Shown here: positions 13,919-64,000 of the stretch, in pieces
Position numbering within the stretch: position 1 is the first letter of the stretch
Layout: every line of letters begins with the position of its first letter
Origin: Antechinus flavipes
Lineage: Eukaryota
Direction: 5' to 3'
DNA: 64,000 nt
NCBI RefSeq assembly: GCF_016432865.1
Contig: NC_067399.1
Location: forward strand, 390,290,001-390,354,000
Translations under genes and position numbers: made by a program
Notes under the pieces: generated by a model
The model's input: only the letters and a program-made list of their open reading frames with translations
Database searches by the model: none
What the model was told of the DNA's origin: nothing

Positions 13919-14059
13919 NNNNNNNNNNNNNNNNNNNNNNNNNNNNNNNNNNNNNNNNNNNNNNNNNNNNNNNNNNNNNNNNNNNNNNNNNNNNNNNNNN
14001 NNNNNNNNNNNNNNNNNNNNNNNNNNNNNNNNNNNNNNNNNNNNNNNNNNNNNNNNNNN
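13919..14059. other. Assembly gap (141 N)
   Basis: Run of N. Confidence 1.
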
Positions 14060-26715: not shown

Positions 26716-29186
<2,471 letters not shown>

Positions 29187-60665: not shown

Positions 60666-61791
60666 AGATGAAATATTTTCCCCCACAAATTCTATCAAGA
60701 ATATTTTTTTGTCTCTGAATGAGTTTTTAAATACATCTAAGAATGTGTTTTAAGTGCTGATTTATCTATTTTGTCCCTTTGTTTTCCAAGTTTTAAATTT
60801 TCTTTTCCACCTTTGTATAATAAAAATTGAGGATGTCCTTCAGAACATATCCTTTCATTGCATTACTTGTAAAGGATTTTGCAGCTAACATCCCTTAAAA
60901 TCAATTTTTCCATTTTAAAACCAAATTTATCCTCAAATAAAGTACATTTCAACTATCTAAGCATATACATGCTGCACAATTTCTTTCTCTAAGTCTTTTT
61001 ACTCAACTTTGAATGGATACAATTATGCATAACTTATCTATTTTTAAAATTCCATGGTTTTCTCTGCCTATTTTTCCTTCCATTCATTAATAATTAATGG
61101 AATATACCCCTAAGCCCAATTTTAGTTAGTATATGAAGCCATTATTTTCGTTGAGTTGGCAGGTGCTCAGGAGGTTGACTATTTTTTCTCCCTTTTTTGT
61201 TAGAATTTATTGTCACCCTCTTCTTAAATCTTTATTTAATTCTCTGAAGATATACTACTTACTTGGCAAGAAAACACATGTGAACCATATCTCTTCCTCT
61301 TAATCTACCATTGATAGAACAATATATGGAAAAGATGACCACAAATATCTTTATGAAGTCAGGGGAGAGTGTCTTCAGCAATTTCAATAGTCACATACTT
61401 AATAAACTATTTCTTGTCTCTCTGTAGCTCTTGATAATTGATTCAATTTTCATTTCCAAGTGTGGCTGTGGTAAAATTCTTCACTGAGACAGGTAGTGAT
61501 GCCATAAACAGATAAAGAATACCACAATTATGCTTGTGGAGTGGCAGGTCACTTTTGTGGTAGAAAATGAAAGAGGATAGTATCAGCGTCCCATGAATGG
61601 TTTTTCCTCTTCATTTAACATTATTTTTCAATACTTCTCTAATCTTAGAAAATAGTCTATGTTTACCTAAAATACTCTGTGCTTGAATTTGTTTGTCTCC
61701 TGAAACATACATGAAAACATCAACTTTGCAAGAACCAATAGATTTTAACTATTTTTACCGAACTGTACAATCCTTGCGTTATTTGATTGAG

Positions 61792-61818
61792 CCACTTAGT
61801 GGCGCTGTAGACCAGGAA
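61792..61818 (+). promoter_or_regulatory. CSE/CTCF site of divergent gene 9
   Basis: CCACTTAGTGGCGCTGTAGACCAGGAA, CGCT at 61803, ~260 bp upstream of the ATG. Confidence 0.8.
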
Positions 61819-62061
61819 GAAGCCTTTCGGAAAATCCCAGAGCGAAACTCTGTCACATGAAACCCCTTGCTTTCGGAAAAGCACTTGGGTCTGCAGGGCG
61901 CTTTCAAGCTGTGCCTAAATCCTGACCTCTGCTATTGGAAACATTGTCGTAGCTGGAACCTGAACAGTGGAGTCCTGTGCCCATCTGACCCTTTTTCTGA
62001 CTTGGGGGTCACCACAACCGCAACGCTGTGTTTAGTAACCAGTTGATGTGGAGAGACAGTA

Positions 62062-64000
62062 ATGGCGCCAGCACCGCGGGAAATAATCAGGCAAGTTCTC
62101 TTTGTTTGTATTTTTATCTTTGGGAGGTTCCGTGTGGAGTGTGAAACCATTCACTATTCTATATCTGAAGAAATAGCCATCGGCTCCTGCGTGGCTAATT
62201 TTGCAAAGGACTTGGGTCTGGATGTGAAAGCGTTGCCTTCTCGGCAGGCTCGGCTAGTTGCGGCTGGTAATGGGGAGCATTTCCTATTGGACCTGAAAAC
62301 AGGGGAACTGCTCACAAAGGACCGAATAGATCGGGAAGAAATATGTGCCCAGATGGACGAATGCATCATCCGTTTTGAATTATTGCTGCAAAATCCATTG
62401 AGGTTCTTCCGGGCAGAGTTAGCTATTTCTGATATCAACGATCATTCGCCTCAGTTCCCAGAGGATGAATTCATTTTAAAGATCCCCGAATCCACTACCG
62501 TTGGCACGCGCTTCCCCCTGGAGAGTGCGCAGGATTTAGATGCAGGGGAAAATGCCCTTCAGAACTACACGCTCACTCCACCAAATGAGCCCTTCGTTTT
62601 GCACACTAGGGAGCAGAGCGATGGCAGCAAGTACCCGGAGCTGCTCCTGGTAAAGGCCCTGGACCGCGAGGAGCAACCAGAACTCGAGTTCCTACTCACC
62701 GCTGTGGATGGTGGAATCCCGCCCACCTCGGGGACCGCCAAGGTCCGTATCATTGTCTTGGATGCAAATGACAATGCCCCAGTGTTCTCTCAGTCTCTGT
62801 ACCAAGCTACTGTGGCAGAAAACAGTCCAACGGGCTCAGTAGTGACTATTGTATCTGCAGTTGATTCAGACCAAGGTCGCAATGGAGAAGTGACTTACTC
62901 ATTCAGTCAAAATGCCGGTAAAGGTCATCGTGCTTTCCAGATAGATTCTCTGACGGGGGAAATTCGAATCTCTAAACCTCTAGACTTTGAAGTGACTGAA
63001 AAATATGAACTAAGTGTTAGGGCCACCGATGGAGGAGGATTATCCTCGCATTGTAAAGTCCTTGTGGAGGTGGAGGATGTGAATGACAACCCCCCTGAAG
63101 TGACAGTGACATCTCTTTCCACTCTACTCCCTGAAGACTCTTTACCTGGAACAGTGGTGGCCCTTTTTAGCGTCCGTGACAAGGACTCTGGGGACCATGG
63201 GAGAGCCTCTTGTTCCATTCCAGATGACATCCCTTTCATCCTGAAGCCGATTTTCAACAATTACTATGAATTAGTGACAGATGCAGCCTTGGATCGGGAA
63301 AGGGTTTCCAATTACAGCATAATGATCACTGCCGTAGACTCGGGATCTCCTAGTCTCTCAACTAGGGAAACTGTCACAGTGCAAATATTAGACATCAATG
63401 ATAATCTCCCTCTTTTTAATCAATCGTCCTATACCATGTATGTGACTGAGAATAACAGTCCTTTCCTGATGATTGGAGCGCTAAATGCTACTGATTCAGA
63501 CTCGGGGCAGAATGCTAAAGTGACATATTCTATCTGGCCTGAGAACAATAATTCTCCCTTTTCCTCCCCATTCATTTCTATCAATTCAGAAAATGGACAA
63601 GTCTACATTCTGAAGACTCTTGATTATGAAGAAATCAAAGACTTCAAAGTGACTGCGCAAGCATCGGATTCAGGGGCCCCTTCCTTGAGCACTAATGTTA
63701 CGGTATATATAGTCATCGTGGATGAAAATGACAATGCCCCAGTTATTTTATACCCTATTCAGAACCACTCTGCTTCTTATAGTGAACTGGTCCCTAGGTC
63801 GGCTGAAGAAGATTACTTGGTTACTAAAGTGGTGGCTGTGGATGAGGACTCAGGTCAGAACTCCTGGCTTTCCTACCAGTTACTTAAGGCAACCGATCCT
63901 GGGTTGTTCATTGTATGGTCTCATAATGGAGAAGTTCGAACTTCGAGATCCATCAGCGACAGAGATGCTATCAGGCAGAAACTCATTATTCTTGTAAGAG
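62062..64000 (+). CDS. PCDHB: Divergent protocadherin beta-like gene 9 (runs off window end; not in ORF track)
   Basis: Hand translation from ATG 62062 (MAPAPREIIRQVLFVCIFIFG...) is open to 64000, covering EC1 through most of EC6; own CSE at 61792-61818. Confidence 0.9.
   Translation, partial: MAPAPREIIRQVLFVCIFIFGRFRVECETIHYSISEEIAIGSCVANFAKDLGLDVKALPSRQARLVAAGNGEHFLLDLKTGELLTKDRIDREEICAQMDECIIRFELLLQNPLRFFRAELAISDINDHSPQFPEDEFILKIPESTTVGTRFPLESAQDLDAGENALQNYTLTPPNEPFVLHTREQSDGSKYPELLLVKALDREEQPELEFLLTAVDGGIPPTSGTAKVRIIVLDANDNAPVFSQSLYQATVAENSPTGSVVTIVSAVDSDQGRNGEVTYSFSQNAGKGHRAFQIDSLTGEIRISKPLDFEVTEKYELSVRATDGGGLSSHCKVLVEVEDVNDNPPEVTVTSLSTLLPEDSLPGTVVALFSVRDKDSGDHGRASCSIPDDIPFILKPIFNNYYELVTDAALDRERVSNYSIMITAVDSGSPSLSTRETVTVQILDINDNLPLFNQSSYTMYVTENNSPFLMIGALNATDSDSGQNAKVTYSIWPENNNSPFSSPFISINSENGQVYILKTLDYEEIKDFKVTAQASDSGAPSLSTNVTVYIVIVDENDNAPVILYPIQNHSASYSELVPRSAEEDYLVTKVVAVDEDSGQNSWLSYQLLKATDPGLFIVWSHNGEVRTSRSISDRDAIRQKLIILVR

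What the first reader, a model, noticed from the sequence alone, without database searches (positions are those of the whole stretch)
61792..64000. Deeply divergent, bird/reptile-like PCDHB at the 3' end of the array, missed by the ORF track
Seen: an open frame from 62062 with its own CSE and an unrelated 5'UTR. It differs from all eight neighbours through EC1-EC5: EEICAQMDECIIRFELLL, a one-residue EC2 insertion (YTLTPPNEPF), [80 protein letters not shown], plus an extra Cys in GSCVAN. From memory of family sequences, these signatures resemble chicken/sauropsid PCDHB more than human PCDHB2-16 (unverified). Inference: a relic of an ancient amniote beta lineage retained in marsupials and possibly lost in placentals. 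It could act as a C-type-like outlier of the beta cluster.
Basis: partly seen in the sequence, partly recalled or inferred. Interest (0 to 1): 0.8.

Follow-up and report, generated by a model that had tools for sequence, protein, structure and literature searches.

The report
Third, ancient beta-protocadherin lineage in marsupials
The frame is a real, intact beta-type clustered protocadherin gene that sits last in the marsupial beta array and belongs to an old lineage that is neither PCDHB1 nor the ordinary betas, has no placental counterpart among annotated proteins, and groups most closely with bird beta genes.

Summary
An open frame starts at 62062 and runs off the window. Its own CSE/CGCT box lies 264 bp upstream. 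It encodes a signal peptide and six cadherin repeats, and is 50-56% identical to eight neighbours that are 60-78% identical to each other.

The window is Antechinus flavipes. The full gene is one 768-codon exon. It has 1:1 orthologues in eight marsupials of four orders. Antechinus-koala dN/dS is 0.21.

It is not PCDHB1. Marsupials carry a separate PCDHB1 (75% identical to primate B1) 76 kb upstream of the window, and that gene lacks a CSE. Placing this gene inside the marsupial expansion is rejected (AU p=1.5e-6). It also lies outside the gamma-A and gamma-B representatives. In koala the next gene downstream is the first gamma-A exon, so this is the last beta.

Maximum-likelihood trees put it beside the bird beta clade (99/97). 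The grouping holds in both halves of the protein and in slow sites, and the two groups share a one-residue EC2 insertion. Without birds, its position relative to other mammalian betas is unresolved.

No eutherian or monotreme orthologue appeared. The "C-type-like" idea has no support: the gene has an alternate-type CSE and evolves at the same rate as its neighbours. I found no paper describing the lineage. Interest is moderate.

The parts
61798..61810 (+). CSE core with CGCT box (AGTGGCGCTGTAG), a forward CTCF-site-like promoter element 264 bp before the ATG
   Evidence: One of 8 pattern matches, one before each gene, 0 expected by chance. The koala orthologue keeps GGCGGCGCTGTCG at -266, and the flanking promoter sequence is conserved.
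61811..62061 (+). Promoter-proximal region and presumed 5' UTR (transcription start not mapped)
   Evidence: Lies between the CSE and the ATG. Contigs of runs X21 and X22 cover 61555-62081, but the library type is not on record.
62062..62142 (+). Start codon and signal peptide (aa 1-27)
   Evidence: The translation MAPAPREIIRQVLFVCIFIFGRFRVEC precedes the mature ETIHYS. The mature N-termini of solved protocadherin structures align from aa 28.
62143..63999 (+). EC1 to most of EC6 (aa 28-646). Inter-repeat Ca-binding motifs: DINDHSP, DANDNAP, DVNDNPP, DINDNLP, DENDNAP. The exon continues 368 nt past the window to a stop codon.
   Evidence: Pfam hits. The linker D/N residues are invariant in alignment A1. 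The full 768-aa single-exon gene, with TM segment and Cadherin_C_2, is at L003:13818-16124.
62566..62595 (+). YTLTPPNEPF: EC2 segment carrying the one-residue insertion
   Evidence: Among about 430 retrieved proteins of 1,300 residues or fewer, the insertion occurs only in the marsupial orthologues and in bird beta proteins.

Best explanation
This is a working single-exon beta-type clustered protocadherin gene. It is the last beta gene before the gamma cluster in marsupials. It represents a third beta lineage, separate from PCDHB1 and from the ordinary, species-expanded betas. The lineage split off before marsupials and placentals diverged, and most probably in early amniotes, because its closest relatives are the bird beta genes. 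It survives as one conserved copy in marsupials and has no annotated placental or monotreme counterpart. Inferred mechanism: like other alternate isoforms, it is probably chosen stochastically through its forward CSE/CTCF site looping to the beta/gamma enhancers. It would then reach the membrane as a six-EC protein that recognises itself in trans through EC1-EC4. Given how different its EC1-EC4 is, this would add one very distinct recognition specificity to the marsupial neuronal code. Shown here: gene anatomy, position, orthology, purifying selection, exclusion from B1, ordinary betas and gamma, and the CSE. Inferred only: promoter choice, binding behaviour and expression pattern.
For: The frame is intact with six EC repeats. 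The full gene is one exon with a TM segment and Cadherin_C_2, and no Cadherin_tail. Orthologues of 84-97% identity exist in Sarcophilus, Sminthopsis, Macrotis, koala, Petaurus, tammar and opossum. Antechinus-koala dN/dS is 0.21, with all six EC domains between 0.11 and 0.35. The genes o7, o8 and o9 are syntenic 1:1 in koala, followed 6.4 kb later by a gamma-A-type exon. A separate marsupial PCDHB1 exists in 12 species and is 75% identical to Papio B1. It lies 76 kb before the window and has no CSE within 1 kb. In the careful ML tree, o9+birds has 99/97 support, B1+ordinary betas 98/96, and the beta clade 100/100. AU tests reject o9+B1 (p=1.3e-4) and an all-mammal beta clade (p=1.7e-3). Even without birds, AU rejects o9 inside the marsupial betas (p=1.5e-6) and o9 with therian ordinary betas (p=5e-4). 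The o9+bird grouping recurs in EC1-3 (93) and EC4-6 (54), and in the slowest 70% and 50% of sites (93, 81). Without o9, birds keep the same place in the tree. The EC2 insertion is shared. The CSE is present. Published reviews state that the CSE marks alternate genes and is absent from b1, ac2, gc4 and gc5 (PMC7811963).
Against: With birds removed, the deep position is unresolved. An all-mammal beta clade (p=0.54), o9+B1 (p=0.28) and o9+ordinary betas (p=0.37) are all allowed. The o9 and bird stems are both long (0.32 and 0.37), and several bird rows have deviant composition. Long-branch attraction plus a convergent one-residue insertion is therefore possible. The o9+bird-only pairing sits inside an archosaur group, which fits the species tree awkwardly (AU for archosaur monophyly p=0.023). 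The Antechinus copy has lost its last ~26 codons to a one-base insertion that the Sarcophilus protein does not show. Transcription is not shown, because the library type of the two covering runs is not on record. The absence of eutherian and monotreme orthologues rests on annotated proteins only.
Confidence: 0.72

Rival explanations
1. It is an early mammalian beta paralogue, sister to B1 plus ordinary betas or to one of them. It would have arisen within the mammalian stem and then been lost in placentals and monotremes. On this view the bird affinity is long-branch attraction and the shared insertion is convergent.
For: Without birds, none of the mammal-only placements is rejected (p=0.54, 0.28, 0.37). 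Both stems are long and bird composition is deviant. Single-residue indels do recur: Mesocricetus B18 and Chelydra have independent insertions nearby.
Against: With birds included, the all-mammal clade is rejected (p=1.7e-3). o9+birds survives removal of fast sites and splitting of the protein. Bird placement does not depend on o9. The insertion is at the same alignment position, next to a Pro and before N/S-E.
Confidence: 0.25
2. It is the marsupial orthologue of PCDHB1, displaced to the 3' end of the array.
For: NCBI names the tammar and bilby proteins 'beta-1-like'. Over EC1-3, mouse Pcdhb1 gives the best single-stretch PDB score among those shown (373 bits against 290 for gamma-B4 and 287 for gamma-B2).
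Against: A separate marsupial PCDHB1 (820 aa, 75% identical to Papio B1, within a single 90%-identity cluster across 12 marsupials) sits at the 5' end and groups with eutherian B1 at 100/100. o9 is only 54-57% identical to B1. AU rejects o9+B1 (p=1.3e-4). o9 has a CSE and B1 has none.
Confidence: 0.01
3. It is a fast-evolving or decaying member of the local marsupial expansion, that is, a pseudogene in the making.
For: The Antechinus tail is cut short by a frameshift, and the bilby tail is also aberrant.
Against: AU rejects nesting in the marsupial betas (p=1.5e-6). The frame is open in eight species. dN/dS is 0.21, the same as the intact neighbours o7 and o8. The Ca-binding linker motifs are all intact.
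Confidence: 0.02

Closest known systems
Ordinary beta protocadherins (PCDHB2-16 in human, Pcdhb2-22 in mouse, and the eight neighbours in this window)
   Same: Single exon of about 770-800 codons. Six EC repeats, a TM segment and a short Cadherin_C_2 tail with no constant exons. Forward CSE/CGCT box 150-260 bp before the ATG. Tandem + strand array between alpha and gamma. Similar dN/dS.
   Different: Only 50-56% identical to them. Excluded from their clade, which already includes the monotreme genes. Carries a one-residue EC2 insertion. Remains a single copy rather than being part of the species-specific expansion.
PCDHB1
   Same: Also a divergent, single-copy beta kept 1:1 across marsupials. 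Shares the EC3 motif [19 protein letters not shown].
   Different: B1 is at the 5' end and isolated, lacks a CSE, is more conserved (all 12 marsupial copies fall in one 90%-identity cluster) and exists in placentals. This gene is at the 3' end, 1.4 kb from its neighbour, has a CSE and has no placental counterpart.
Bird beta-type protocadherins (annotated 'protocadherin beta-15-like' or 'beta-4-like')
   Same: Sister clade in ML trees. Same EC2 insertion. Single-exon beta-type genes in tandem (Rhea loci).
   Different: 57% identical. Birds have many copies, while marsupials have one. Whether the bird copies occupy the same gamma-proximal position was not examined.
C-type protocadherins (alpha-C1/C2, gamma-C3/4/5)
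   Same: Divergent from the array they adjoin and placed at the 3' end of a run of variable units.
   Different: Not related in sequence: EC1-3 scores are 264-322 bits to C-type structures against 373 to Pcdhb1. Not spliced to constant exons. Carries the CSE that ac2, gc4 and gc5 lack.

Membership tests
Clustered protocadherin, beta subfamily | Signal peptide, six extracellular cadherin repeats, one TM segment and a short variable cytoplasmic domain | tested here: met
   Pfam finds Cadherin_2, Cadherin repeats and Cadherin_C_2 on the full 768-aa product. The TM stretch is visible in the translation.
Clustered protocadherin, beta subfamily | Whole protein encoded by one exon ending in its own stop codon, with no constant-exon tail | tested here: met
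   The gene is called as one CDS at L003:13818-16124. Orthologues are 790-792 aa without PF15974 Cadherin_tail. Splicing itself was not examined with reads.
Clustered protocadherin, beta subfamily | Lies in the tandem array between the alpha and gamma clusters, in the same orientation | tested here: met
   PCDHB1 lies 76 kb upstream on the same strand. In koala a gamma-A-type exon follows 6.4 kb downstream.
Clustered protocadherin, beta subfamily | Groups with beta variable exons rather than alpha, gamma-A, gamma-B or C-type | tested here: met
   The beta clade has 100/100 support and excludes the gamma-A and gamma-B representatives.
Clustered protocadherin, beta subfamily | CSE with CGCT box upstream of the start codon (all betas except B1) | tested here: met
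   Present at 61798-61810, one of 8 matches with 0 expected by chance. The definition is from PMC7811963.
PCDHB1 orthologue | Forms a clade, and reciprocal best match, with eutherian PCDHB1 | tested here: not met
   The best non-eutherian match of Papio B1 is Antechinus 'protocadherin beta-1' at 75% identity, not this gene. In the tree the B1 clade is 100/100 without it. AU p=1.3e-4.
PCDHB1 orthologue | First gene of the beta array, isolated, without a CSE | tested here: not met
   This gene is last in the array, 1.4 kb from its neighbour, and has a CSE. The Antechinus B1 gene has no CSE-like site within 1 kb and no called neighbour within 10 kb.
C-type clustered protocadherin | Sequence kinship with alpha-C or gamma-C variable exons | tested here: not met
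   PDB scores to gamma-C3, gamma-C4 and alpha-C2 are well below those to Pcdhb1. The gamma-C5-like frog sequence served as outgroup.
C-type clustered protocadherin | Constitutive, biallelic expression in neurons | not testable with these tools
   No single-cell or allele-resolved marsupial data were available. Contig coverage in runs of unknown library type says nothing on this.
Gamma cluster variable exon | Spliced to the three gamma constant exons (Cadherin_tail) | tested here: not met
   There is an in-frame stop in all orthologues and no Cadherin_tail in any annotated product. Rare splicing was not tested.

The most novel reading that the evidence does not exclude
The amniote ancestor already had at least two distinct beta paralogue types. 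One gave rise to the turtle/crocodile genes and to mammalian B1 plus ordinary betas. The other became the beta type that dominates in birds, and among mammals it survives only as this single gene at the beta/gamma border of marsupials. On this view the beta cluster is not a single paralogue subgroup shaped only by lineage-specific duplication, as published comparisons concluded (PMC2764143). Placentals and monotremes would each have lost an ancient recognition specificity.
Probability: 0.55. Interest if true: 0.55.

Novelty: new member of a known kind. Interest (0 to 1): 0.45.

Why it matters
Published comparisons describe the beta cluster as one paralogue subgroup with no one-to-one orthologues between major vertebrate groups, evolving only by lineage-specific duplication and loss (PMC2764143). 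Here the mammalian betas fall into three old lineages:

- PCDHB1.
- The ordinary expanding betas.
- This gene, which is kept 1:1 across four marsupial orders and is missing from placental and monotreme annotations.

This gives a dated marker for the history of the cluster. It is also a natural case of a lost or gained recognition specificity between marsupials and placentals. Finally, it provides a handle on the beta/gamma border, because it carries the last forward CTCF-site promoter before gamma-A1. It does not change how protocadherins are thought to work.

Tried and rejected
1. The exhaustive representative search returned only giant cadherins and fused gene models, and gave no usable relatives.

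2. Whole-chain PDB bit scores were misleading, because extra repeats in longer chains add cross-hits. Gamma-B4 looked best until the per-stretch scores were read: 290 bits against 373 for Pcdhb1.

3. The first whole-protein homologue list was saturated by sauropsid and fused proteins and showed no eutherian B1. A search restricted to EC1-EC2 and a search with Papio B1 as query were needed.

4. The gene is not the B1 orthologue, not a fast member of the marsupial expansion and not a gamma exon (see rivals).

5. Looking up neighbour o8 from the second Met failed; the annotated start is the first Met.

6. Wu 2005 (PMC1449604) is not held in the library. Four paper searches found no description of this lineage.

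7. The runs of 'organism A' are listed as holding 41% of the words, but the one laid (X12) put nothing on the gene and matched only a conserved piece of o8 with mismatches. This is unexplained and was not used.

8. Ranking expression of o9 against o8 from contig depth was not attempted, because the runs were selected for holding o9.

Full report
**What is there.** Translating window 62062-63999 on the + strand gives 646 codons from an ATG to the window end without a stop. The ORF lister skips this frame only because it runs off the end. Pfam finds a Cadherin_2 domain followed by Cadherin repeats. The frame is 48-56% identical to the eight other protocadherin ORFs in the window, which are 60-78% identical to each other. 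The pattern RGTGGYGCTGYRG occurs eight times, always on the + strand, against none expected by chance. One copy lies roughly 150-260 bp before each gene's likely start codon, and this gene's copy is at 61798-61810, 264 bp before its ATG. This is the CGCT-box conserved sequence element (CSE), the CTCF site of protocadherin promoters (PMC7811963).

**Source and full gene.** Exact look-ups of neighbouring proteins place the window on Antechinus flavipes chromosome CM028218.1, at window coordinate plus 390,290,000. The locus fetched around neighbour o8 contains the whole gene. It is one exon of 768 codons with a transmembrane segment and a Cadherin_C_2 tail, and no ORF of 150 aa or more lies in the 6.3 kb beyond it.

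**Orthologues.** Orthologues were found in seven other marsupials:
- Sarcophilus: 97% identical.
- Sminthopsis: 95.5%, partial model.
- Tammar and koala: 88%.
- Petaurus: 87%.
- Bilby and opossum: 84%.

Most are 790-792 aa, and none has a constant-region tail. Antechinus-koala dN/dS is 0.21. All six EC domains fall between 0.11 and 0.35, and the values for the syntenic neighbours o8 and o7 are 0.19 and 0.21. The gene is therefore under ordinary purifying selection, neither more nor less than its neighbours.

**Position.** Antechinus PCDHB1 lies 76 kb before the window on the same strand. No gene is called within 10 kb of it, and no CSE-like site lies within 1 kb upstream. In koala the orthologues of o7, o8 and this gene follow each other in the same order. 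6.4 kb further on comes an ORF whose best matches are gamma-A-type proteins, followed by a gene model with a gamma constant tail. No TAF7- or SLC25A2-sized ORF lies in between. In opossum nothing is called within 10 kb downstream. The gene is therefore the last beta before the gamma cluster.

**It is not PCDHB1, not an ordinary beta and not gamma.** A search with Papio PCDHB1 returned, just below the eutherian B1 proteins, "protocadherin beta-1 [Antechinus flavipes]": 820 aa and 75% identical over the full length. Its 90%-identity cluster holds B1 from 12 marsupial species, several of which also have the present gene. The present gene is only 54-57% identical to B1.

A careful ML tree was built from 70 sequences and 618 columns under LG+C20 PMSF. 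Its main groupings are:
- A beta clade with 100/100 support, excluding the gamma-A and gamma-B representatives.
- Marsupial plus eutherian B1 (100/100), sister to the ordinary betas (98/96). The ordinary betas include the monotreme genes (100/100).
- That mammalian group sister to a turtle/crocodile group (97/94).
- The five sampled orthologues of the present gene (100/100) sister to the bird beta clade (99/97).
- These two together next to an alligator/goose pair (86/80).

AU tests reject this gene plus B1 (p=1.3e-4) and a single clade of all mammalian betas (p=1.7e-3).

**How far the bird link can be trusted.** Both stems are long (0.32 and 0.37), and several bird rows have deviant composition, so I tested for long-branch attraction.

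Results that weaken the deep placement:
- Without birds the gene still falls outside the turtle-plus-mammal group (SH-aLRT 91). However, the alternatives are no longer rejected: all mammalian betas together p=0.54, with B1 p=0.28, with ordinary betas p=0.37.
- Forcing the archosaur genes into one clade without this gene is marginally worse (p=0.023). The exact pairing with birds alone therefore fits the species tree awkwardly.

Results that stand even without birds:
- Nesting within the marsupial ordinary betas is rejected (p=1.5e-6).
- Nesting within the therian ordinary betas is rejected (p=5e-4).

Results in favour of the bird link:
- Without this gene, birds keep the same position beside the alligator/goose pair (88).
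- The pairing recurs in EC1-3 (93) and, weakly, in EC4-6 (54).
- It also recurs in the slowest 70% and 50% of sites (93 and 81).
- Independently of any substitution model, the one-residue EC2 insertion occurs in all eight marsupial orthologues and in the bird betas. It occurs in no other protein among about 430 retrieved proteins of 1,300 residues or fewer.

My reading is as follows. The lineage is certainly older than the marsupial-placental split, because B1 has members from both and the ordinary-beta clade has members from all three mammal groups, and this gene nests in neither. It is probably, at about 0.55-0.65, an early-amniote lineage shared with birds.

**Absence elsewhere.** In two searches with this protein, the best eutherian and monotreme proteins reach only about 51-57% identity overall and 58-59% in EC1-2. 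An orthologue at the 65-75% identity seen for B1 would have ranked near the top. This covers annotated proteins only; genomic relics could not be searched.

**Function.** Nothing sets this protein apart mechanistically from alternate clustered protocadherins:
- The Ca-binding linker motifs between all repeats are intact.
- It has a beta-type tail.
- It has a forward CSE, which published work associates with CTCF/cohesin-mediated stochastic promoter choice. The CSE is missing from b1, ac2, gc4 and gc5 (PMC7811963). Beta genes are expressed monoallelically and combinatorially in mouse neurons (PMC3431597).

The most likely role is therefore one more stochastically chosen homophilic isoform with an unusually distinct EC1-EC4. 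The "C-type-like" suggestion is unsupported, given the CSE, a dN/dS equal to the neighbours and no sequence kinship to C-types.

Transcription is only suggested. Two small runs from the same study as the genome assembly cover 61.5-64.0 kb almost continuously and cover o8 only in patches. Their library type is not on record, and they were selected for holding this stretch.

**Comparison with the literature.** The anole cluster paper states that the beta subcluster is a single paralogue subgroup without one-to-one orthologues between anole, human and coelacanth, evolving exclusively by lineage-specific duplication and degeneration (PMC2764143). Four full-text searches found no description of this marsupial lineage. 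Databases label it inconsistently as beta-1-like, beta-16-like, beta-5-like or even gamma-C3.

**Verdict.** The functional speculation is not supported. It is a new, old-branching member of a known family and of moderate interest.

Noticed in passing
L003:16050-16190 (window-extended 64294-64434), compared with L006:12143-12420: The Antechinus copy has a one-base insertion (AGA GGA ATT TAA against koala AGT GAA TTC AAA) that ends the protein 24 residues early and removes the SEFKFLKP...PQLENSEMFP tail. The old reading frame and its stop codon are still recognisable downstream. The Sarcophilus orthologue (97% identical) keeps the full 792-aa tail, so this is either Antechinus-specific or an assembly error. 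The bilby tail is also aberrant.
   Followed up: partly
window 26806-29186: Gene 4 is split into two overlapping ORFs (526 aa and 267 aa, overlapping at 28383-28386). This is a frameshifted beta gene or a sequencing error, and it matches another first-reader note.
   Followed up: no
(no window coordinates): No monotreme PCDHB1 orthologue appeared: platypus and echidna hits to Papio B1 are only 57-58% identical and fall among the ordinary betas. Yet the tree puts the B1/ordinary split before the monotreme divergence. Monotremes may have lost B1, or it is unannotated.
   Followed up: no
L006:18819-21265 (koala): The first gamma-A-type variable exon after the beta array is broken into a 643-aa and a 150-aa ORF in the koala assembly. 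The annotated gamma model starts inside the second piece.
   Followed up: partly
L006:12380-18818 and L003:16125-22421: No TAF7- or SLC25A2-like ORF lies between the last beta gene and the first gamma exon in koala, or in the 6.3 kb after the gene in Antechinus. From memory of the human locus, both genes sit there in human.
   Followed up: partly
cluster 1: The 90%-identity cluster holding this protein also holds o8 orthologues that are only 53% identical to it. The apparent cause is a 1,653-aa fused o8+o9 model from a devil assembly bridging the two. That may explain why the window's own protein did not appear in the homologue lists.
   Followed up: partly
window 13919-14059: A run of 141 N (assembly gap) lies between genes 2 and 3. 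It was left untouched.
   Followed up: no
window 61792-64000, runs X1-X18: Eighteen runs of a coded 'organism A' all report exactly 0.41 of the sampled words. The one laid (X12) put no contig on the gene, so this looks like an index artefact or filtered records.
   Followed up: partly
(turtle proteins P0050, P0053, P0061): Some turtle 'beta-1-like' isoforms of 934-944 aa carry a Cadherin_tail domain. This suggests that beta-like variable exons are spliced to constant exons in turtles, at least in the gene models.
   Followed up: no
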